Assembly (NCBI RefSeq): GCF_036321535.1 | Contig: NC_087451.1 | Span: 31,558,001 to 31,622,000 of the forward strand | Reading direction: 5' to 3' | From: Camelus dromedarius | Lineage: Eukaryota | DNA length: 64,000 nucleotides | Shown: positions 24,880-58,870 of the stretch, piece after piece | How the letters are laid out: every line of letters starts with the position of its first letter | Position numbering within the stretch: the first letter of the stretch is position 1 | Notes under the pieces: model-generated | Database searches by the model: none | Told to the model about the DNA's origin: nothing | What the model saw: the letters and a program-made list of their open reading frames with translations, nothing else | Translations under genes and position numbers: made by a program

Positions 24880-27420
24880 CATTCAATTTCCAGTTGTGAA
24901 ATTAATTTTAAAGCTCACCTGAAAAAAACAAGCAATATTAGAATATCTAGAATTTTTTGAGGAAATTAGAATACCTACAAGATTTGTGTTTTTTTGAGGA
25001 GAAAAAATCAAGAAAGAATAATATCCCTACCAAATATTAAATTAAATATAATTGTCATAAAGCTACATTGCCTTAACTGGTTTGGTACTGGTGCTGAAAT
25101 AGGTAAAAGCAGTTCATTTAAACAGAATATATCCCAAATATCTGTGGGAACTTATTTATGATATAAGTAGCACTTCAAGGCAGTGTTTGAATAATTATTG
25201 AAAAAATTGTTGAGACTATTGAAAAAGTGTTGAGACTATTGGGTATCCATCCAGGAAAAAACACAGATGGTTCAATGTTGTAAACACTTTTTAAAAAGAA
25301 AAAGAAGAGGAAGAAGAAAGAAAGTAATTTTTTAAAAGTGTTTTGGGTTTTGTTTTTTTTTAAAAAAGCTTAGATGGGTAAGCCTTTCCAAGCAAGACAC
25401 AAAACCAAAAAGTTAAAAAATAGAAAGTCTGATCACTATGAATAAATTAAAATTCTGGTAGAAAAAATCAACAACAACAACAAAATTAAACCACATAATA
25501 ACGAAAAGAAATGTTTTTTCCACATAAATGATAAAGGCTAATTTCTTTAATATGTAAAGAATTTTGAAAAACTAATATGGCCATTAAACAAGAAATTCAA
25601 TCTTACTTTTAACTGAAGGAAAAAATTAAACATGAGATGCCACTGAAAAAATTTTTACTAATAGACAATTTTTTAGGTTTACAGAAAAGATATTGTGCAG
25701 AAAGTACAGAGTTCCCATATGCCCCTTCTTGTCTTATTGCGTTAGCTAGGATTTCTAGTATGATGTTGAATAGGAGTGGTGAGAAGAGGATATCCTTACC
25801 TTGCTCCCAATCTTAGGGTGAAAGCATCTAGTTTTTCACTATTAAGTATGATATTAACTGTAGGTTCGTTGTAGATGTTTTTATTAAATTGAGGAAGTTA
25901 CTCTTNNNNNNNNNNNNNNNNNNNNNNNNNNNNNNNNNNNNNNNNNNNNNNNNNNNNNNNNNNNNNNNNNNNNNNNNNNNNNNNNNNNNNNNNNNNNNNN
26001 NNNNNNNNNNNNNNNNNNNNNNNNNNNNNNNNNNNATGGATTACCTTAACTGATTTTCAAATGTTGAACCAGCCTTGCATACTTGGAATAAATCCTTCTT
26101 AGTCATGGTGTGTAATTTATTTTGGTACATTGTTGGATTCTNNNNNNNNNNNNNNNNNNNNNNNNNNNNNNNNNNNNNNNNNNNNNNNNNNNNNNNNNNN
26201 NNNNNNNNNNNNNNNNNNNNNNNNNNNNNNNNNNNNNNNNNNNNNNNNNNNNNNNNNNNNNNNNNNNNNNNNNNNNNNNNNNNNNNNNNNNNNNCTGGAG
26301 AAGAATTGTAGAGGATTGGTATTGTTTCTTCCCTAAATGTCTGGTAGAATTCACCAGTGAAACCATCTAGGCCTGGTGCTTTCTACTTTGGAAGCTTATG
26401 AATGACTGATTCAATTACTTTAAAAGAAATAGGCACATTATCTATTTCTCCTTGTGGGAGTTTTGGGTGATTGTGTCTTTCAAGAAATTGGTCCATTTCA
26501 CCAAAGTTATCAAATTTAGGGGAATAGAGTCATTCATAGTATTCCTTTATTATTCTTTTTAAAGTCCATGGCACCAGTAAGGATGACGCCTATTTCATTT
26601 CTGATATTAGCAATTTGTGTCTTCTTTTTTTCTTGATTGGCCTGACTAGAGATTTACCCATTTTTTTCATCTTTTCAAAGAACCAACTTTTGATTTCCTT
26701 GACTTTCTCTGTTAATTTCCTATCTTCTGTTTCATTGATTTCTGCTCTAGTTTTTATTATTTCTTTTCTTTTGCTTATTTCAGATTTGATTTGCTTGTTT
26801 TATGCTTATGTTTCCTAAGGTGGAAGCTTAGATGAGTGATTTTAGCTCTTTCTGTTCTAATGTATCTATTCAATGTTATAAATTTATCTCTAAGCACTAT
26901 TTTCACTGCATCCCACACATTTCTATAAATTGTATTTTCCTTTCCATTTAGTTCAAAAATTAAACATGATATGCCACGTTTCATCTATCAGATTGGCCAA
27001 AATGTTAAAGCTTGACAGTATTGAGTGTGGGTTAAGGTCTGGGGGTGTGTAAGGTGCGCTTGTACATTGGTATTGGAAGTATAGACTAGTTCAACCATTT
27101 TACATGACGATTTGTATGTATCTATACAAATTTAAAAGGGATATACATTTTGATTGAGCAATTCCACTCTCAGAAGGCTAAGAGCAGAATGTATGTATGT
27201 ATAGGGTACAGAGTTTGCAGTAGTTAAAAAGCCAGAAACTATAATACATGTCCAATAATAAGAGGACTGCTTCAATATATTATATCTATTCGAGGAAATA
27301 CTATTGAAAGAATTCACACTAATGCTAAAAGGATGATCAAGGTACACTGTTACCTGAACACATAGGCTATAGGAATAGTATGTTTAATGTGGTAGCATTT
27401 GTGTTTTGTTTAAAAAAAAA
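24880..27420 (+). mobile_element. Old degraded L1 (pieces 24880-25643 and 26955-27420) split by a younger insertion
   Basis: L1 ORF2/3'UTR-like A-rich sequence on both sides; 23-bp duplication at 25621-25643 and 26955-26977. Confidence 0.6.
25644..26954 (-). mobile_element. L1 insertion with ORF2 remnants
   Basis: Minus-strand translation ELNGKENTIYRNVWDAVKIVLRDKFITLNRYIR resembles L1 ORF2p (ETNENKDTTYQNLWD...RGKFIALN); flanked by a target-site duplication. Confidence 0.85.
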
Positions 27421-29749
27421 AAAAAAGGAAGAACTTATTCTGTCTATAACAGGCTTGGATTTGCATGGACACATCTGAAAAGTCGTAACTGGGGTTACTT
27501 CTGGGACAGAGGTGCTTGGGGGCCAAGGAGGGCACTTTTTGCTTTTCCCTTTACACCTTCTTTACCGTTTGAACTTTCAACCCTCAATAAGTATCACATT
27601 TAATTTGAGAAACAGTTTTAAACCCAGCTTGCAGATTTGGGCCCCCAAGTTGCTTCAGGCATGTTAAGCATTTCCTTTGCTCTCTCTTCCTTATGAACTA
27701 TTTGAAAGGCTGCCCATGCCTGGCCTCTGTATACCCTGGTCCTTTCTCTCATTTTTTATCTANNNNNNNNNNNNNNNNNNNNNNNNNNNNNNNNNNNNNN
27801 NNNNNNNNNNNNNNNNNNNNNNNNNNNNNNNNNNNNNNNNNNNNNNNNNNNNNNNNNNNNNNNNNNNNNNNNNNNNNNNNNNNNNNNNNNNNNNNNNNNN
27901 NNNNNNNNNNNNNNNNNNNNNNNNNNNNNNNNNNNNNNNNNNNNNNNNNNNNNNNNNNNNNNNNNNNNNNNNNNNNNNNNNNNNNNNNNNNNNNNNNNNN
28001 NNNNNNNNNNNNNNNNNNNNNNNNNNNNNNNNNNNNNNNNNNNNNCTATCAGATGGCACTGTTGATGGCTGGTGGTTTCTAAATGAGGAAAATGAACTAA
28101 TTTTAATCATTATGGAAAAAAAGGAAAATTTGTTTTCTTAGAAGTGTTTTTATAGAAAGGTCATTTAAACTCAGCATCTTTAGAAACTAGAGGGGGGAAA
28201 AATTCTCCAACTACTCTACTTACCATTTCAGTATGTTGTGGTGTTCTCCTGAAGTTTTTTTGCTGTGCATCTATCATATTTTAAATGGCTGTAACCCCAG
28301 GGAACATATGCTATTGTGATCTGCTTCTGTGATTCTGCCATACCATATTCACTTTCAGTATTGCTGCAGGGCCAAAAAACATTAATTTGGAGGAATTGTA
28401 CACCTAATTCCTCAGAGCACAAAGTCTTGAGTTAGGAAGTTGCCAAACTAAAGAACAGGCTGTTGGGGGAGCAAGCTCTTCCTCCTTCCCTCCGGAAAGA
28501 GACTCTCCGGGAGTGGGCAGCGGTGGGGGCTCCGTTAGGACCGGCACCTTTGTGTTCTGAACATTTACAAATGAAAGGCAAGTATCTGAGGCTGCAGCTG
28601 AAACACTACTTTCTCCTTTTGCTCAAGCAGTTTGTGCTGAGTGTAGTTGGGAAAAGACAACTTTTCCTGAATCAATGTCCCCTTGTCAACACCTACCCGA
28701 CATGGGGTTGGGACTTACCAAAGCTCACCATTTCATTCTGTCTGCCCTTTACCAGATATGGTCATCATAAATGGAACCTGCTTTTCACAATGGATTTTCC
28801 TGAAAATCAGATCGGCAGCTTCTCATAACAATAAACGGAACTCCTGAGCTACCCAGCACGGGGAGGCCGAGAACAGCCTCAGCTGTACCCTCTCCTGGCC
28901 AGCTGTGTTGACTTAGCGCAACTGACTCTCTGAGCCTGACCTTCCTCATCTGCAGAAGGGAAACCACAGCTGTGCCTGACTTGTAAATTCATTGTGAGGA
29001 TTAGGTTAGGTGGTGTTTGTAACAGAGATGGGCAAACAGAAAGCTCTCAGTACATGGTAGCTAACTACCACATTACACTTAGAGGAAGAAATCTGAGAAA
29101 ATGTGAAAACACACACACGTAGTTTATTTAAAAATTGCAGTGGTATTGTACAAGGTTCAAAGTGTTTGTTCACAACCCTAGAGAATTCCTTCCTGAGACC
29201 TATATAACAAGGTGTTACCACGATTTTCTGGAGTGTCTTCTGTGGACTGGGTGCTGTTCAGAGCCTCTCAGCGCTGGTCCATCTGAGTCCAAAGCCCTTT
29301 GCACCACAGCCCTCAAGCTCACTTATTCTTCACTGTGGCACCTAACAGTTTAAACCTTTCCTTTCTCTTAGTTCTCGAGACTGCATAAGGACCCTTTACA
29401 GGTCAGGATTATGGTTTTGGATTCCTCTGGGTCCGTGGGCGACCACTCTGTCCCCATCCCAGGGCTTACACACAGGGCCCACTCCATGAGCTTTTTTCCC
29501 AAAGGGGAAAACGACTACATAGGCCTTTCGTTCATTAAATGGGTACATATTAGGCGACTACTGTGTGACAAGCTCTGTGCTGTGCTTTGTGGGGAATGTG
29601 ACATCGGTGTCTGAATTCAGAAGTCGATCTGGAGGAACGAATTCATCAGCAACCTTTGTGAGAATGAGCCTTCCCAAATCTTGCCGAGAAGACAGCAAGT
29701 GAACTATAGTTGTCCTGCCAGCCGAGGGACAGACCACCGCTCGAAAACC

Positions 29750-30480
29750 TTCTCTGATAAGAGCGGGAACCCTCACCAAGGTAAAACCCGGCCATAGACC
29801 CTCCGGCCACACCCAAGATGGCCACCTGCCCCGGCCCCTGTACTGAGCACGCAGGCGCACTTCCGCTTGCCACTCCCANNNNNNNNNNNNNNNNNNNNNN
29901 NNNNNNNNNNNNNNNNNNNNNNNNNNNNNNNNNNNNNNNNNNNNNNNNNNNNNNNNNNNNNNNNNNNNNNNNNNNNNNNNNNNNNNNNNNNNNNNNNNNN
30001 NNNNNNNNGCGGAAGTGGGTGTGACAGGGACGGGAGCCGAGAGGGCACTCTGAGGCACGATCCTGGGCAGGGGGAGCCGCAGGGTCGAAGCCATGATTCC
30101 CCCGCAGGAGGCGTCCGCCCGGCGGCGGGAGATCGAGGACAAGCTGAAGCAGGTGGGGCGGGGGCCGGGGAGGCGGGGGAGAAGGTGAGGGAACGGGCCG
30201 AGATCTGGGCCGAGCGGCTACTCAGGGAGGAGGCTGGAGTGGAAGGGGGCATTGCCTACTAGGAGACCGGGCTGGGGGCGAGGCCGTAGGGCGGGGACGC
30301 GAATGATCTGTAGCCTCCAGCTTCTGGTGATGTCCTCCCTTGCTCTCCCCCTAGGAGGAGGAGACACTGTCCTTCATCCGAGACAGCCTGGAGAAGAGCG
30401 ACCAGCTCACCAAGAACATGGTAAGTAACCTCTTAGCTGGGAGGGCCTCCAGACGCTGGAGAAGAACGCCGCCGCCACTG
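29750..30480. promoter_or_regulatory. EXOC7 CpG-island promoter with ETS motifs
   Basis: CACTTCCG 29858-29865 and GCGGAAGTG 30009-30017 flank a 130-N run. Confidence 0.7.
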
Positions 30481-39400: not shown

Positions 39401-42400
39401 AGATCCAGAACAGTGAGGGGCACTGGCAGAATCAGGAGCTCCACTGGAGGAACAAAGTGTGTTCATCCCTCCAGCTCCACCGGCAGGGCCCCCGCGGTCC
39501 CGGGCAGGGCCCGCCGGGAGAGCCGCACGTGGGCATGCTCACTGCAGGGCCGGGCGTGGGGCCTGGGGGGCCGGGGGGGGCTGCTGCTGTTCTCTCTNNN
39601 NNNNNNNNNNNNNNNNNNNNNNNNNNNNNNNNNNNNNNNNNNNNNNNNNNNNNNNNNNNNNNNNNNNNNNNNNNNNNNNNNNNNNNNNNNNNNNNNNNNN
39701 NNNNNNNNNNNNNNNNNNNNNNNNNNNNNNNNNNNNNNNNNNNNNNNNNNNNNNNNNNNNNTCCTATTCCTCTCCTCTTCCCTCCTCCTCCACCGTGTGT
39801 TCGCTCACGTGGCAGGGCAGAGCCACCAACCCCCCAGAGGGCCTTGGGAGCAACCCTGAGAGGGGAGCAGGGGTGGGCACTGCAAGTCCTTGGGGCCGCT
39901 GACCCCGCTGGCTCAGGGACAGGTTTCGTGGCCCTCGGCCCGGTCCTGTCTGGTGGACGGCAGCTCTGCCCTTCCTGAGGCTTCCCACTCCCTCCCCTCC
40001 CTGTCTCTGTCCTTATCTCCTGTTTGAACTCAGAGAAAGTTCTTTGTCACGGGCAGCCCTTTCACGCTCAGACCAGCAGTGGCAGGACCAAGCCACTCAG
40101 GCCTCCTGGCCGCTCCCCTCCCCACCGCGACTTTAGAAAGGGGAGCCAGTATGCCGTGTCCCTCCCTCCTTCCCATCAGAGGAAGGACAGCCCCGCCCTG
40201 GTGGGCCAGACCCTCCTTCAAAAGAATGACCCTGGGGGACAAAAGAAGGCTGTCCCCATTCACTTGGCAGTGACATTTCTTTAACTGAATCGCTCCCCGA
40301 ATGTGGTGAGACATACCCCCTGGGCTGAGCATCAGACTCTTGAAGCTTCCAGAAGCTCTTCAGAACCCTCTTTGGTCCTCACAGCTTTCTCTTAGCCTTC
40401 GGGAAACCAGCTCCCAAGGATGGTCCTGGACACTGCAAGTCAGGCTTGAAATGGCTGTTCCCAAGGTGGTCTGAGGCAGAGGAGGGGCTCAGAGCCCTCC
40501 CCATGCCCCTTCCCCTCCACCCCATCTCACATTCCCCCCCGGAGATTGAGGGCTTCTTCCCAGTCCCCCGAGGGCAGCCGCCCCACCCCTGGATAAACGC
40601 TGCTTGTGTTTGCGGCCAACGTCTCGCTAGGTCACGAGCATGATTTCCGAGTAAAGCACCTGTCCGAGGCCCTGAACGACAAGCATGGGCCGCTGGCCGG
40701 TGAGTACCGCAGCCCAGCCCAAGGGCAGCCGCTCTGCGTTCACGGCAGTCCCCAGAGGGCCTGCTCCGGCCTGGCCCAGCCAGGCCATTCTGCTCCGAGG
40801 ACCAACCGGGCCTACTCGCCTCTCTCTCTCCAGTCTCTCTCTCTTTTGGGCACCAGGTCTCCTTGCCTCTCTCCAGACAGGAGTGCATTCCTGGCTCTCA
40901 GGGTCTGGGCCAAGGGGAGAAGTTTCTGCTACTCAGAAGGCGGGCAGAGAGGGAAGGTAGCCCCTGAAGGGCAGGGAGCTCCGACATCTGATTCCAGCCA
41001 CAGCTCCAAAGCTCTGACTCCTCAGAGCTCATCCCTTGCATGTAGGACCAGGTTGCCTGCAGGCATCCCTGCCCCGGCCTCCAGTATAGGGATTCGGTCT
41101 CCTCCTGGGACAGCTGACAACCAAGGAGCCCTCCCTTCCTGGGGCTCACGTTGCCTCTTCTCCAGTTTTGACTCCATGCCAGCTAGCCTCGTGGACCAGA
41201 GCCCACCACCTTTTTATATGTTCTAGGAGGCCTGGCTGGCTGGTAACTGCCTTCAGAGGCTCAGCATTTTCTGAGATGGATAACCACGGTGCCTGCCTTC
41301 TTGAGGTGGACACTGCCACCTGCCCATCCCTTGCTGTCCTCCTCCCAGTACAATTCAGAATCCTCGGTCCTGAGGTCAGACAGACCTTATCCAGGAAGTT
41401 GATTGAGGGATCTTCTTATCCTTCTATCCGTCTCCCCAACGCCTAATACGCGACACTCCGGAACTTAAATACTGTCCTTAGCAGAGCTGGAGAAGAAGCC
41501 AGGACAAAGGCTGGACTTAGCCCGTTTTTCCCCTTGAACCCTGTCGGGCTGGCTGGAGGCCTTTCAGCTTTTCTGCCAGAGCAGTCTTCCTCCCCATCTG
41601 TTACCGGTCTGGCTACAAGCCAGGAGCTCGGGAGACTCATGCCCCCCAAGCAGGGAGAGGGGCTGCCCCCAAAGCAGCAGCTCAGGGGCACTGCTGTCCC
41701 CCCAGGGAGAGATGACGTGCTGGACGTGGAGACCGATGCCTACATTCACTGCATCAGTGCCTTTGTCAGGCTGGCCCAGAGCGAGTACCAGCTGCTGACG
41801 GACGTCATCCCTGAGCACCATCAGAAGAAGACCTTTGACTCTTTGATACAGGTCCTGTCTCTCCCCGCCCCACCCCTGGGCCCTGACCAGATGCCCAAGC
41901 AAGAGCTGACATTGCAGAAACTTGAGTTTAAGCCAGGCCTGTGGTTCATGGCCCTCAACTCAGCTACCACCTCCACCTCCCATCCTGGGCAATCTGTCCT
42001 GGGTGGCATGTCTGGGTTGTACCTCCCCATCAGAGGTGTACTTCCCCCATGGCCCTCCAGGTGCCCTCAGTGTCCCTGGGAACCAGCTGTCTGCCCAGTC
42101 CCCTGAGCCGTCTCCATGCACCTCACAGGACGCCCTGGACGGGCTGATGCTGGAAGGGGAGAACATTGTGGCTGCTGCCCGGAAGGCCATCATCCGACAC
42201 GACTTCTCGGCAGTGCTCACCGTCTTCCCCATCCTGCGGCACCTCAAGCAGACCAAGCCTGAGTTTGACCAGGTGCTCCAGGTACATGAGTGAGGAGGCC
42301 CTGGGGGACACCAGGAGTTGGAATCCTGCCACCCGGCTTGCTTCTGTTCAGAGGGTGAATGGAAGCAGCCTCCTCAGGGCCCCAGGCATGTGGAGGGACT

Positions 42401-51951: not shown

Positions 51952-53111
51952 TCAGTCACTTCTCTGGGGGACCTAGCAGTTGGTTCGAGGCAGCCGTTCT
52001 GTGCAATGACCCTGGAGCCTTGGAGTTGGCACACCCCCACCCTGGTTCTGCAAACACCTGAAGACAAAGCCCAGGACCCAGCCCCGCCCACCTTGCACCT
52101 GCCTAGGCTTCCCTGTCCCGCTCCATTTCCACCACCTGGAACCAGTTACCACGTTCAAAGCCCACCAAGCAGACCAGGCAAGCATGGGACCCCTCCCCCT
52201 TGCCACACACTCTGTGACATGATCCTTCCAACCTGGGCAGGTGCAGCCTGTGTTTCCATAGCAGGTGCCCTCCTGGCTAAGTACCCAAGTCCTCACCAAA
52301 GTGCCCTCTGCTCAACGATGTGAGGTGGGCACATCCTGCCGCTCCTTAAACACCAATCTGATTTTATGGAAAAACAAACAAACAAAAAAAAACCTTGGCT
52401 CAAGAACTCTAGGAGTAGGGCAAATCTGGGAATAGGAAGAGTCTAACTCCTGACCAAAGCCCTGGGACATTTCTATTCTGGACTGGATTCTCAGCCTCCC
52501 TAGTTCAGCAGTGCCTTAGAACGGCTGCTCTGCACCTTGGAGTAGGACTGGTGGGTGTTAGGGTGGCTTTCCTGGCCCAAGGATAAATGGAACCAGTGGA
52601 GACCAGGTCCCAGAGAGCTGCAGCAAGGAAAGGAGACTCCAAGGCTGAAAGTGGATAGGCACTGATCTGGCTGCCCAAATCGAAGAGGCCCCAGGGAGCT
52701 GAGAACAGGCGAGGACCCGTCACACCGGTGCACAAACGCTACTGGGAACACACATAGTGTCTAAATCTCATCCACCTAACTTGATCGAGCGCGCTAAAAC
52801 ACTGTCTGCCTTTGTCGCACGCACTAGCGGCTGCTGGTTCGCAGATCTATATACACCTGTCGCCTCCGCATGGCCATGTGCAAAGAGCCTTAGGCCGTCC
52901 TGCGCTCCCCAGCCTCAGGGATGTCTACGTGGATTTTAACTCTGCTGCCTTCAGTGCCACCGCCCTTTTCCCTCGTAACTCGGCAAAGCACCCAGCACTC
53001 ATTCATCCAGAGCTCCCCTGTGAAGTCCCGGAGGCTTCCTACCACGGAGCCTCATGACCATGAGAGATGCGGAGACACAGCGCGTCACTGCACATGAAAT
53101 GGTTTGCGTGT

Positions 53112-53117
53112 TTTATT
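53112..53117 (-). terminator. Probable GALR2 polyadenylation signal
   Basis: TTTATT on +, about 75-90 nt past the stop. Confidence 0.7.
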
Positions 53118-53206
53118 AACAGATGACACTTCCTCCACGATCCCCCGACCTCTGACTCCAATTTTTTAACACCCAAGCATACCCCCTACTCAGGTCACAT
53201 TAACTG

Positions 53207-55630
53207 TCAGGATGCCTTTGCGGGCATTTTGGTCCCGCAGGACAGGCTGGGGACCAGGTTCGAGGGCTGGCCGCTGAGAGGCGCCGGTGCAGGGAAAGAG
53301 GGCCCGGCCACCTCGCTCACGTGCGTTAGGTCGGTGGACTCGCGCTCCAACACGCTGCTGCCGTGGGCGCCCTGGACCGCGACGCACACGCGGCCAGAGG
53401 CTCTGCGCGGGGCGCGGCGCAGCAAGCCCGCACAGATCTTGCGGAAGCCCTTGCGGAAGTGCTTGGAGACCAGAGCGTAAACGATGGGGTTGACGCAGGA
53501 GTTGGCGTAGGAGACTAGGTGCGAGAGGATACGCAGCGCGTAGGTGGCGCGCGTAAGAGGGAAGCGGCCGAACCACACGCAAAGGATAAGCGTGTGGTGA
53601 GGCATCCAACAAAGGCAGAAGAGTGCGGCCACGATGATGATCATACGCGTCACCTTGCGCTTGGCCCGCCGGGCGCCCGAGCTGGCGGCCACCGGGTCGA
53701 CGGCGCGCCAGAGGTAGCGCAGGGTGCGCGCGTAGGTCAGGCCGAGCACCAGCACGGGGAGCACGTAGCTGAAGACAAAAGTGCAGAGGTCCATGGCGCG
53801 GCGGCGAGGCGCGCTCCACGCCGGGTGGCACACGGTCAGGTTGGCCAGCCTCGACTGGCGGTAGTAACTCAGGTAGGGCCCGGAGAAGAGCAGCGATAGC
53901 CCCCAGATGAACGAGATGGCCGCCAGCGCGTTGCGAGGCGTGCGCAGCTCGCGAGAGTGCAGCGGGTATCGGATGGCCAGATACCTGCGGGTCAGGCCAG
54001 AAAGAGAGACGTCAGGTGAGCCGGCGGATTCTCTAGGCAGGGCTGGGTCCCTCCACCTCGAGCCCTACACCCGCTCTCGAGAAAGAGGAAGGTCCCTAGC
54101 GCAGGTTAACACCGCACAGCGCGCAGGGCGACACAGCGCATCCAGGACACCCTAAGCCGCGCCTAAATGGGGGGTGGGGGGCGTATAATATAGGACTTTC
54201 AGTGGCCCTTCCCGAGACTACTACCACAGCCATGCTCCACCTGGTAGGGCACCCCGAAGATTAAACTGGCTTCGGGACTCCAGAGGATGGAGCTATGATT
54301 ACCCATCAACGATGGTGCCCGGAGAGGTAGGACCCAGGTGCTTGGAAGCTCTAGTAGCAGACAGCCTGGAGATACGTCAGGCAAGGTACCGTGAGGGAAT
54401 TCCTTAGAGAAGCCAACGCTGGGTGCCACCAGCGCTCTTGGAACCAACACACTTCGTATTCAGTGGAATGGGAAGTATACGGGGAATGTAGCCTCACCTG
54501 CTGCCTGTCCAGGGAAGGTCGGGAGGACGTGGGGGCGGGGGGTGGGGGAGCCAGGTGGATACTGGAGTCAGACTCAGATTTTTTCCCCCGGGAATCATCC
54601 AGGTGTCCTTTCAAGATTCAGCTTTGGTGGTGGGGGGGGGACCCTTGGGCGGGCACTCCTCTCCTGCCCTTGACCCCACAGCGGGCCTGCTGTGGGGTAT
54701 GTGCTTGCTGGGACTTTGGTGTGGGCCCTCGCGAAGGACCCAGATTCCGCAGGAAGAACCGGAGAGTCGACTGTGCCCAGCAAACTGTGGCTTCGAGATG
54801 AAGGAGGTGGGGGCGCCTGAGTATGACTCTGGGAGACAGACTTCATGCACAGGATTACTGGATGGGCGACTCTGAGCACATCACTTAGAAACTCCCTCTT
54901 GTCTATAAATTGGGCGCAGTAATCCCTCCCATCCCAGCCTCACAGGGGCGCTGAGCTTCAAGGGAGATCCAACACGCGAGCACGCTTTGTACCCGGAAAC
55001 GCTGTGCTTTGTTAGACGCGGGTGGCGCCATAGAGCTAAGGTCTCCAGCCTGCAGCCTCGAGGACGCATCTAAGAGTACACCAAGGTCCCCCATTCCTAT
55101 TCCTCTTTCTCCTCCATCCTCTCCTGCTTGTCTTTCACTCCCTCCTGGACCCCATGATTTCTTAATGTCCTTTTCTACTCTGCGCATCTCTCCCTGACCA
55201 GCCCCCTTCTCCAGCCCCAGCCTGCGATCCCGACACCCTGGGCCGCCAGGGCCCTCGCTCACCTGTCCAGGGAGACAGCGGCCAGCGTGAAACTGCTGGC
55301 GTGCATGGTGAGGAAGATGAAGAAGTGGACGGCTTTGCAGAGCAGCGAGCCGAACACCCAGCCGTCCAGGGTGTAGATGGTGGCCTGGAAGGGCACGCAG
55401 CACACGATGAAACACAGGTCGGCCACGCCCAGGTTGAGGATGAACAGGTTGGTGGTGCTGACCGCCTGGCCGCCGCGCAGTAGCACGGCCAGCACCAGTG
55501 CGTTGCCCACGGTGCCCACGAAGAAGATGAGCGCAAATAGCACAGGCACGATGACTGCCTCCGGCTGCCAGCTCCCCGCGCCGGCCGCCTCGCTCGCGTC
55601 CTCAGTATCCAGGCCACCCGAGCCATTCAT
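53207..55630 (-). CDS. GALR2: Galanin receptor 2 (class A GPCR); as read 381 aa with a frameshifted C-tail (ancestral-type stop at 53190-53192)
   Basis: Exon 1 55630-55263 (368 nt; MNGSGG...[16 protein letters not shown]...VSLDR) and exon 2 from 53984 ([19 protein letters not shown]...CWMPHH...NSCVNPIVY). The DRY motif is split by the intron. Confidence 0.95.
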
Positions 55631-57624: not shown

Positions 57625-58870
57625 TTTAAAGCGTTACTGAGATATAATTCATATGCCGTACAATTTACCCATAGATAGTGTTTGTTTGATTTTTCGCATA
57701 TTCACAGAGTTATGCAACCATCACCACAAACAGTTTTAGAACATTTTTGTCCCTGCCAAAAGACACCTCCCACCCCTAGCCCTAGGAAACCACTCTTTCT
57801 GTCTCTAGATTTGCCTATTCTGGCCATTTGATATAAATGGAGTGATACAATNNNNNNNNNNNNNNNNNNNNNNNNNNNNNNNNNNNNNNNNNNNNNNNNN
57901 NNNNNNNNNNNNNNNNNNNNNNNNNNNNNNNNNNNNNNNNNNNNNNNNNNNNNNNNNNNNNNNNNNNNNNNNNNNNNNNNNNNNNNNNNNNNNNNNNNNN
58001 NNNNNNNNNNNNNNNNNNNNNTTTAAAATTATTTTTAATCATGGTAAAATATACAATGCACAATTTGTCATCTTAAACATTTTAAGAGTACAGTTCAGTA
58101 GTGTTAAGTATGTTCACATTGCTGTACAACCAATCTCCACAACTTTTTATTTTTAGAGGAGGTACTGGGGATTGAACCCAGGACCTTGTGCATGCTAAGC
58201 ATGAGCTCTACCACTTGAGCTATATTCCTCCCTGTCCAGAACTTTTTGATTTTTGCAAAACTGAAACTCTATAACCATTGAACAATAACTCCCCATTTCC
58301 CCTGCCTCCAGCCCCTGGCAACCACCATTCTACTTTCTATACATTTGACTACACTAGATACCCCATATAAGTGGAATCATACCATATCTGTCAATTTGTG
58401 GCAGGCTTACTTAACTTAGGACAATATTTTCAAGATTCATCATGTNNNNNNNNNNNNNNNNNNNNNNNNNNNNNNNNNNNNNNNNNNNNNNNNNNNNNNN
58501 NNNNNNNNNNNNNNNNNNNNNNNNNNNNNNNNNNNNNNNNNNNNNNNNNNNNNNNNNNNNNNNNNNNNNNNNNNNNNNNNNNNNNNNNNNNNNNNATGTC
58601 TTTTCAAGACCAGCTTTCAATTCTTTGGTATATATATCCAGAAGTGGAATTGGTGGATCATATGGTAATTCTTTTAATTTTCCAAAGAACTGTCATACTG
58701 TCTTCCATTGTGGGCATACCATTTTCTATTTCCACCAAGCTTATAATTTCTCCACATCTTCACCAATACATGTTATTTTCTGTTATTGTTATTTTTAATA
58801 GCAGCCATCCTAATGAGTGTAAGGTGATAACTCATTGTGGTTTTGATTTGCATTTCCCTGATGATTAATG
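57625..58870 (-). mobile_element. L1M 3'UTR fragments with two N-runs and a nested SINE
   Basis: gagatataattcatatgccgtacaatttaccc...ggaatcataccatatc...gatttgcatttccctgatgatta. Confidence 0.75.
58145..58232 (-). mobile_element. tRNA-Ala-derived SINE
   Basis: gaggaggtactggggattgaacccaggaccttgtgcatgctaagcatgagctctaccacttgagctatattcctccc. Confidence 0.85.

What the first reader, a model, noticed from the sequence alone, without database searches (positions are those of the whole stretch)
53190..53310. 1-nt frameshift in the GALR2 C-terminal tail with the ancestral tail intact in the next frame
Seen: after ...[10 protein letters not shown] the frame reads [31 protein letters not shown] (381 aa). 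The adjacent frame reads [36 protein letters not shown], resembling the recalled human tail (ALRPCPGASQPCILEP...GDSILTVDVA*). Adding one G to the GGG run (plus-strand CCC at 53303-53305) gives exactly 387 aa, the human length. Inference: either a recent lineage or individual frameshift that rewires the GRK/arrestin-binding tail, or a homopolymer sequencing error.
Basis: partly seen in the sequence, partly recalled or inferred. Interest (0 to 1): 0.7.

Follow-up and report, generated by a model that had tools for sequence, protein, structure and literature searches.

The report
Real GALR2 tail frameshift, misplaced by reader
This animal's galanin receptor 2 gene has a real one-base deletion that replaces its last 16 amino acids with 10 new ones.

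Summary
The window carries an intact, single-copy, two-exon GALR2 orthologue on the minus strand (381 aa). The placement of the shift and the polarity are wrong.

DNA alignments with 11 other mammals show no indel at the GGG run (53303-53305). There the window has the state shared by Laurasiatheria, rat, sloth and manatee. The one primate examined (Chlorocebus) is the shifted one: +1 at that spot and -1 about 58 nt later, a compensated frameshift. That explains why the window's other frame resembles the human tail.

The only window-specific coding indel is a 1-nt deletion between 53239 and 53238 (Trp codon TGG becomes TG). It replaces [16 protein letters not shown] with [10 protein letters not shown]. 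The conserved Ser/Thr cluster upstream is untouched.

It is not an assembly error. All sampled 31-mers spanning the site occur in read-derived contigs from three organism labels, five DNA studies and three RNA studies.

The lost ...ITFNVT-COOH end is conserved from fish to mammals. It has nevertheless been lost or extended independently in rodents, pangolin, sloth, cattle, pig, serow, horse, cetaceans and others. Verdict: real, lineage-level, modest in effect, low to moderate interest.

The parts
55263..55630 (-). GALR2 exon 1 coding part (ATG at 55630-55628; ends GACAG followed by a GT donor). Encodes the N-terminus to TM3, up to the DR of the DRY motif.
   Evidence: Pfam 7tm_1 E=1.2e-19
53985..55262 (-). 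Single GALR2 intron (GTGAGC donor, CCGCAG acceptor). It splits the Arg codon of the DRY motif.
53207..53984 (-). GALR2 exon 2 coding part, from TM3 to the present stop (TGA 53209-53207).
   Evidence: Pfam 7tm_1 E=4e-32; 86-96% identity to proteins that sources name galanin receptor type 2
53312..53362 (-). Conserved Ser/Thr-rich block of the C-tail ([17 protein letters not shown]), upstream of the shift and unchanged. It is the likeliest phosphorylation region for GRK/arrestin, by inference from conservation only.
   Evidence: the same block is seen from birds and turtles to mammals
53303..53305 (-). No indel here in any non-primate. Chlorocebus has one extra base at this spot.
53238..53239 (-). 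Site of the 1-nt deletion. All aligned species that cover this column (ten, pig) except rat have a G between these two bases (TGG Trp codon, TGT in Rhinolophus). The window reads TCC TGC GGG.
   Evidence: site-spanning 31-mers held by runs of organisms A, B, D and by RNA runs
53207..53239 (-). New C-terminus [10 protein letters not shown] plus stop. The stop is the out-of-frame TGA inside ancestral ATC CTG ACA, the same TGA that ends the cattle protein (...PPKAS*).
53190..53237 (-). Former coding sequence of the ancestral C-terminus ([15 protein letters not shown] plus TGA). It is now out of frame and partly 3'UTR.
53112..53117 (-). AATAAA poly(A) signal in a 3'UTR conserved across Laurasiatheria. 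A window-specific 6-nt deletion lies at 53189/53188, just 3' of the ancestral stop.

Best explanation
The locus is the intact, expressed, single-copy orthologue of galanin receptor type 2.

In the lineage of this animal one G of the Trp codon TGG was deleted, between window 53239 and 53238 on the minus strand. Three organism labels in the read archives carry the allele. Translation therefore leaves the ancestral frame 16 codons before the old stop. It reads ten new residues ([10 protein letters not shown]) and ends at an out-of-frame TGA, in the last exon, so nonsense-mediated decay is not expected.

The following parts of the receptor are unchanged:
- the seven-helix core;
- the DRY and NPxxY motifs;
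- helix 8 and the cysteine that follows it;
- the conserved Ser/Thr cluster;
- the proline-rich part of the tail.

Only the extreme C-terminal ...[12 protein letters not shown] motif is lost. That motif is conserved from fish to mammals.

Shown: the deletion, its polarity, its presence in independent DNA and RNA data, and the integrity of the rest of the gene.

Inferred: the receptor still signals normally. Any effect would be limited to whatever the terminal motif does, such as trafficking, recycling or binding of a partner. That function is unknown, and the motif is evidently dispensable in many mammals.

The resemblance of the window's other frame to the human tail at 53303-53240 comes from a separate, primate-side compensated frameshift, not from an event in this genome.
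For: Gene identity:
- Pfam 7tm_1 matches both exons.
- The best named hits are galanin receptor type 2 at 86-96% identity.
- The intron sits in the DRY codon.
- The 1.3-1.45 kb downstream of GALR2 in six relatives aligns to the window downstream of its GALR2. In those relatives that flank reaches a Neur_chan_LBD gene.
- There is one copy in the window's own 2.3-Gb genome.

Position and polarity of the shift:
- In MAFFT alignments the only window-specific coding gap is one column between 53239 and 53238.
- All seven Laurasiatherian relatives have G in that column. Chlorocebus, sloth, manatee and deer also carry the base.
- There is no length difference at the GGG run in any non-primate.
- BLOSUM62 local scores for the proximal segment in the window's actual frame versus the other frame: beluga 61 vs 21, horse 64 vs 27, tiger 45 vs 25. 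For Chlorocebus the order reverses, 31 vs 66.
- The distal segment scores best in the other frame for Laurasiatheria, primates and manatee.

Reality of the allele:
- 14 DNA runs (8 samples, 4 studies, organisms A and B) hold 1.00 of 52 sampled 31-mers of 52950-53500.
- In the 61-nt stretch 53208-53268 every 31-mer spans the site. It was held at 1.00 by DNA runs of organisms A, B and D (8 samples, 5 studies) and by six RNA runs from three studies.
- RNA runs held at most 0.73 of the 551-nt stretch. That equals the fraction lying upstream of the expected cleavage site after the AATAAA at 53117-53112 (my arithmetic).

Conservation and lability of the motif:
- 58 of 96 full-length vertebrate representatives end in the ...[FV]N[VI]T-type motif.
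- The exceptions are mostly mammals.
Against:
- The read support is therefore presence of k-mers in Logan contigs. These show presence of this allele, not absence of an intact allele. Only three sampled words span the site.
- All DNA rows are flagged as possible sources of the assembly. Only one sample can be the source, but the independence of the rest rests on the record labels.
- Organism names are coded, so the phylogenetic depth (one genus or a whole family) is unknown.
- Proteins and contigs of the window's own genome and near relatives appear to be withheld from the protein tools. No sister-species sequence could be aligned.
- No functional data exist for the terminal motif.
Confidence: 0.85

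Rival explanations
1. Assembly or sequencing error: the true genome has TGG at 53239/53238 (or GGGG at 53303-53305) and encodes the 387-aa protein.
For: Single-base indels in G+C-rich sequence are a common assembly artefact. The out-of-frame remnant is still nearly perfect (GILTVNVT*).
Against: All sampled 31-mers spanning the site are present in read-derived contigs of many Illumina-era runs. These come from three organism labels, five DNA studies and three RNA studies. The whole 551-nt stretch, including the GGG run, is held at 1.00 by 14 runs. The site is a GG dinucleotide, not a long homopolymer. The remnant is conserved together with the neighbouring 3'UTR in all relatives, so its intactness says little about recency.
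Confidence: 0.03
2. One reading: a 1-nt deletion in the GGG run at 53303-53305 shifted the whole 37-residue ancestral, human-like tail.
For: The other frame from 53303 on resembles the primate tail (score 66 vs 31 against Chlorocebus). Adding one base gives 387 aa.
Against: No non-primate (nine species plus the window, covering Laurasiatheria, rodent, xenarthran and afrotherian) has an extra base there. Chlorocebus alone has +1 there and -1 about 58 nt downstream. The window's actual frame matches beluga, horse and tiger over that segment.
Confidence: 0.02
3. The deletion is real but is a segregating polymorphism, possibly shared between related species, and not a fixed difference. Intact 387-aa alleles coexist with it.
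For: Logan contigs drop minor variants and show presence only (tool notes). No pile-up was possible.
Against: Every listed holder carries the deletion k-mers: 8 DNA samples and 6 RNA samples across three organism labels. Such breadth fits fixation or very high frequency.
Confidence: 0.08
4. GALR2 is on its way to becoming a pseudogene in this lineage, and the tail frameshift is the first lesion.
For: The C-tail has been damaged repeatedly in related lineages: cattle 82-nt deletion, pig 5-nt insertion, serow +1.
Against: The rest of the ORF is intact, with DRY and NPxxY present. It is up to 96% identical to ruminant GALR2 over the 7TM part of exon 2. Splice sites are intact. RNA runs hold the transcribed part, and the 3'UTR and poly(A) signal are conserved.
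Confidence: 0.03

Closest known systems
Galanin receptor type 2 (GALR2) of other Laurasiatherian mammals (e.g. Rhinolophus and walrus, 387 aa; tiger, 388 aa)
   Same: Same two-exon structure and same genomic neighbourhood. Identity over exon 2 is 86-96%. The proximal tail is in the same frame ([12 protein letters not shown]...VPSLS).
   Different: The last 16 residues ([12 protein letters not shown]) are replaced by [10 protein letters not shown] through a 1-nt deletion, giving 381 aa instead of 387.
Cattle GALR2 (NP_001098480, 354 aa; the cluster also lists GenBank entry AAI47996)
   Same: It also ends in ...KAS*, using the same out-of-frame TGA inside the ancestral ATC (C/T)TG ACA. It is another cetartiodactyl with a remodelled tail.
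   Different: The cause differs: an 82-nt genomic deletion that also removes the Ser/Thr cluster. This is an independent event. Deer and serow genomic DNA keep those 82 nt.
Primate GALR2 tail
   Same: Same length, and the same distal ...ILTVDV(T/A) end as the ancestral form.
   Different: Primates carry a +1/-1 compensated frameshift that rewrites about 20 residues of the proline-rich segment. The window does not have it.
Rodent GALR2 (rat, 372 aa; to my knowledge the classical pharmacological model)
   Same: A natural receptor lacking the ...NVT-COOH end. This suggests the motif is not needed for basic function, though that rests on my general knowledge of rat GALR2 pharmacology.
   Different: An earlier stop with a different replacement sequence (...TASSRALDPAC). 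The ancestral coding remnant is still visible in the rat 3'UTR.

Membership tests
GALR2 orthologue (galanin receptor type 2, class A GPCR) | Rhodopsin-family 7TM domain | tested here: met
   Pfam PF00001 7tm_1: exon 2 E=4e-32, exon 1 E=1.2e-19. DRY and NPIVY are present in the translation.
GALR2 orthologue (galanin receptor type 2, class A GPCR) | Closest relatives are proteins named GALR2, not GALR1, GALR3 or kisspeptin receptors | tested here: met
   Nearly all named proteins among the top 120 hits are called galanin receptor type 2 or 2a by their sources (a few have generic names). Mammalian hits are mostly 82-96% identical.
GALR2 orthologue (galanin receptor type 2, class A GPCR) | Single intron after the DR of the DRY motif (two coding exons) | tested here: met
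   GACAG|GTGAGC ... CCGCAG|GTATCTG. The spliced ORF is 1146 nt with no internal stop.
GALR2 orthologue (galanin receptor type 2, class A GPCR) | Conserved synteny (a ligand-gated channel gene, ZACN-like, immediately downstream) | tested here: met
   Relatives have a Neur_chan_LBD gene about 1.0-1.4 kb downstream. Their downstream 1.3-1.45 kb aligns to window 53160-51683 at 67-76% identity.
GALR2 orthologue (galanin receptor type 2, class A GPCR) | Conserved extreme C-terminus ...[FIL]T[FV]N[VI]T-COOH | tested here: not met
   The motif is out of frame in the window. It ends 58 of 96 full-length vertebrate representatives but is also absent from many undoubted mammalian GALR2s. It is therefore typical but not defining.
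Lineage-specific frameshift (real) versus assembly artefact | The same allele in independent read sets | tested here: met
   Site-spanning 31-mers are held at 1.00 by DNA runs of three organism labels (5 studies) and by 6 RNA runs (3 studies). No raw-read pile-up could be obtained.
Lineage-specific frameshift (real) versus assembly artefact | Fixation in the species or lineage | not testable with these tools
   Contigs show presence only. Sequences of close relatives are withheld by the protein and contig tools.

The most novel reading that the evidence does not exclude
The ...ITFNVT-COOH end of GALR2, conserved from ray-finned fish and coelacanth to mammals, may be a functional trafficking or partner-binding motif. 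Mammals have dismantled it many times independently. Examples are this lineage's 1-nt deletion, the cattle 82-nt deletion, the pig 5-nt insertion, the serow +1, the rodent, pangolin and sloth truncations, and the stop-loss extensions in horse, cetaceans and deer. This lineage would then be a clean natural 'motif-only' knockout, because its Ser/Thr cluster is intact. It could show altered GALR2 recycling or signalling bias relative to relatives with the 387-aa receptor.
Probability: 0.2. Interest if true: 0.45.

Novelty: new member of a known kind. Interest (0 to 1): 0.25.

Why it matters
The finding corrects a plausible misreading. Judged against human, the window seemed to have lost a 37-residue ancestral tail. 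In fact it lost only the last 16 residues, and the primate tail is the derived one over the preceding segment.

For annotation, the 381-aa product should stand and need not be 'repaired'. Models copied from cattle onto deer and serow look wrong.

For receptor biology, this is one more natural variant lacking the deeply conserved C-terminal motif while keeping the phosphorylation cluster. That makes it a convenient comparison for testing what the motif does.

Since many mammals, including rat and mouse, lack the motif, a large physiological effect is unlikely.

Tried and rejected
Nothing was laid. As a substitute I used the second sequencing-run search on a 61-nt stretch in which every 31-mer spans the deletion site.
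- Protein and contig look-ups returned no sequence closer than 96% over 78% of exon 2. Records of the window's genome and near relatives seem to be left out. Sister-species comparison was therefore impossible.
- After I thought that deer shares the window's terminal frame (...PKAS*). I rejected this. Deer genomic DNA keeps the ancestral frame, and the 354-aa model depends on skipping 82 nt that only cattle lack.
- Literature searches gave nothing on the tail motif, on a frameshift, or on this lineage. The searches were GALR2 with C-terminal tail and internalization, galanin receptor with compensatory frameshift, GALR2 with frameshift, and GALR2 with camel. A 2026 review states that no galanin-receptor/arrestin structure exists and gives no mapping of tail sites (PMC12938440).
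The N-terminus [11 protein letters not shown] is shared with cetaceans and ruminants, and nearly with pig, which fits a cetartiodactyl.

Full report
**What is in the window**

On the minus strand there is a two-exon gene. Exon 1 coding sequence runs from the ATG at 55630 to 55263 and ends GACAG, followed by a GTGAGC donor. Exon 2 starts at 53984 after a CCGCAG acceptor and runs to a TGA at 53209-53207. The spliced ORF is 1146 nt, 381 aa, with no internal stop.

Four lines of evidence identify it as the GALR2 orthologue:
- Both exons match Pfam 7tm_1.
- Nearly all named proteins among the best 120 database hits are called galanin receptor type 2 or 2a. Mammalian hits are mostly 82-96% identical over exon 2.
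- In six relatives a Neur_chan_LBD gene lies about 1.0-1.4 kb downstream of GALR2. The 1.3-1.45 kb downstream of GALR2 in those relatives aligns to the window just downstream of its GALR2.
- The window's own 2.3-Gb genome holds one copy.

The real frame ends ...[35 protein letters not shown]. The neighbouring frame reads ...[37 protein letters not shown] with its stop at 53192-53190. The GGG run is at 53305-53303. One added base anywhere upstream of the stops would give 387 aa.

**Where the shift really is**

The tails of other Laurasiatherian GALR2 proteins read ...[35 protein letters not shown]. This holds for beluga, horse, tiger, walrus and Rhinolophus. The first part of that tail is the window's actual frame. 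Only the last part is the window's other frame.

I fetched the genomic DNA of beluga, serow, horse, tiger, cow, pig, Rhinolophus, Chlorocebus, sloth, rat, manatee and deer. I aligned the tail region with the window, using window bases at or below 53450 only.

- The only coding indel unique to the window is a single column between 53239 and 53238. All seven Laurasiatherian relatives have a G there, in a TGG Trp codon or TGT in Rhinolophus. Chlorocebus, sloth, manatee and deer also have the base.

**Why the other frame looks human**

It has one base fewer about 58 nt downstream (GGTCCC-GGCCC against GGTCCCCAGCC). Rat, sloth and manatee share the window's state at both places. The primate state is therefore derived: a compensated +1/-1 pair that rewrites about 20 residues.

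BLOSUM62 local scores say the same. The table gives scores for the proximal segment read in each frame.

| Species | Window's actual frame | Other frame |
|---|---|---|
| Beluga | 61 | 21 |
| Horse | 64 | 27 |
| Tiger | 45 | 25 |
| Chlorocebus | 31 | 66 |

The distal segment scores best in the other frame for Laurasiatheria, primates and manatee.

**Is it real?**

The k-mer evidence is nevertheless strong:
- 14 DNA runs (8 samples, 4 studies, organisms A and B) hold all 52 sampled 31-mers of 52950-53500.
- I then searched the 61-nt stretch 53208-53268, in which every possible 31-mer spans 53238. All 3 sampled words were held by DNA runs of organisms A, B and D (8 samples, 5 studies) and by six RNA runs from three studies.
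- At most one sample can be the source of the assembly.
- The site is a GG dinucleotide, not a long homopolymer.
- RNA runs hold at most 0.73 of the 551-nt stretch. That is the fraction lying upstream of the expected cleavage site after the AATAAA at 53117-53112. This fits real mRNA better than contaminating DNA. It is an inference, not a measurement.

Contigs show presence only, so a coexisting intact allele is not excluded.

**Consequence for the protein**

The deletion replaces [16 protein letters not shown] with [10 protein letters not shown]. The 7TM core, DRY, NPIVY, helix 8 and the cysteine that follows it are unchanged. So are the conserved Ser/Thr block [17 protein letters not shown] (53362-53312) and the proline-rich segment. 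The number of Ser/Thr in the exchanged piece stays at two. The new stop is in the last exon.

I therefore expect a working receptor that lacks only the terminal motif. The idea that the GRK/arrestin region is rewired has no support. A 2026 review notes that GalR2 recruits beta-arrestin and recycles, but that no arrestin complex structure exists (PMC12938440). It contains no mapping of tail sites.

**How unusual is it?**

The ...[FIL]T[FV]N[VI]T-COOH end closes 58 of 96 full-length vertebrate representatives. These include coelacanth, sturgeon, gar, teleost galr2a, amphibians, reptiles, birds and many mammals. It is an old, conserved motif of unknown function.

Mammals have repeatedly lost or buried it:
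- Rodents, sloth, pangolin, aardvark, marsupials and several bats end earlier or differently.
- Horse and cetaceans have TGA changed to CGA and a 10-residue extension. Deer has TGA changed to TGC.
- Cattle have an 82-nt genomic deletion that removes the Ser/Thr cluster. The cattle protein ends at the same out-of-frame TGA as the window...PPKAS*.
- Pig has a 5-nt insertion in the proximal tail, seen in a Logan contig whose ORF is on record in dozens of contigs.
- Serow has an extra C that shifts the end to ...QRHLDS*.

The window's event is one more independent case, and one of the mildest.

**Verdict**

This is a real, lineage-level 1-nt deletion in the GALR2 tail. The likely functional effect is small. 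Interest is low to moderate. The broader pattern may deserve a short comparative note: a deeply conserved C-terminal motif dismantled many times in mammals, plus a compensated frameshift in primates.

Noticed in passing
L009 (Chlorocebus GALR2 locus), tail region; corresponds to window 53305 and about 53247: The one primate examined carries a compensated frameshift in the GALR2 tail: +1 base at the position of the window's GGG run and -1 base about 58 nt downstream. About 20 residues (ALHPCPGASQPCTLKPGP) are read in a different frame from all other mammals examined. Rat, sloth and manatee share the non-primate state, so the primate state is derived.
   Followed up: partly
L005 (cattle), L013 (deer), L002 (serow): Cattle genomic DNA lacks 82 nt of the tail (frame-shifting, and it removes the Ser/Thr cluster). 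Deer and serow genomic DNA keep those 82 nt, yet their 354- and 360-aa database proteins skip them. These models look like annotation copied from cattle through an artificial 82-nt 'intron'. Read unspliced, deer gives the ancestral tail with a stop-loss (NLTCGHLEGTLGC*) and serow gives ...QRHLDS* because of one extra C.
   Followed up: partly
L006 (pig Logan contig), aligned to window 53412/53411: Pig has a 5-nt insertion (CCCGG) in the proximal tail that shifts the frame right after helix 8 (...[32 protein letters not shown]). Near-identical ORFs (269 aa, cluster of P0034) are on record in dozens of Logan contigs. UniRef pig models avoid the insertion with odd exon structures.
   Followed up: partly
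L001 (beluga), L003 (horse); window 53192-53190: The ancestral stop TGA is CGA in both horse and cetaceans, giving similar 10-residue extensions (RGHLGGTLEC / RRHLRSTLGC). Platypus also reads on past NVT, and the two tenrecs read on past a diverged form of the motif. The stop codon seems to toggle repeatedly.
   Followed up: no
window 53189/53188: There is a window-specific 6-nt deletion (GGCACT in relatives) immediately 3' of the ancestral stop. It lies inside a 3'UTR that is otherwise strongly conserved across Laurasiatheria, up to the AATAAA at 53117-53112.
   Followed up: no
L012 (manatee): The straight genomic reading of the manatee tail is frame-shifted soon after helix 8 (...[33 protein letters not shown]). 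The database protein is labelled LOW QUALITY PROTEIN, which suggests a corrected frameshift. This is either another lineage with a damaged tail or an assembly error.
   Followed up: no
window 25906-30008, 39598-39761, 57852-58595: Seven runs of N (1180 bases in all) lie in the window. None is near GALR2.
   Followed up: no
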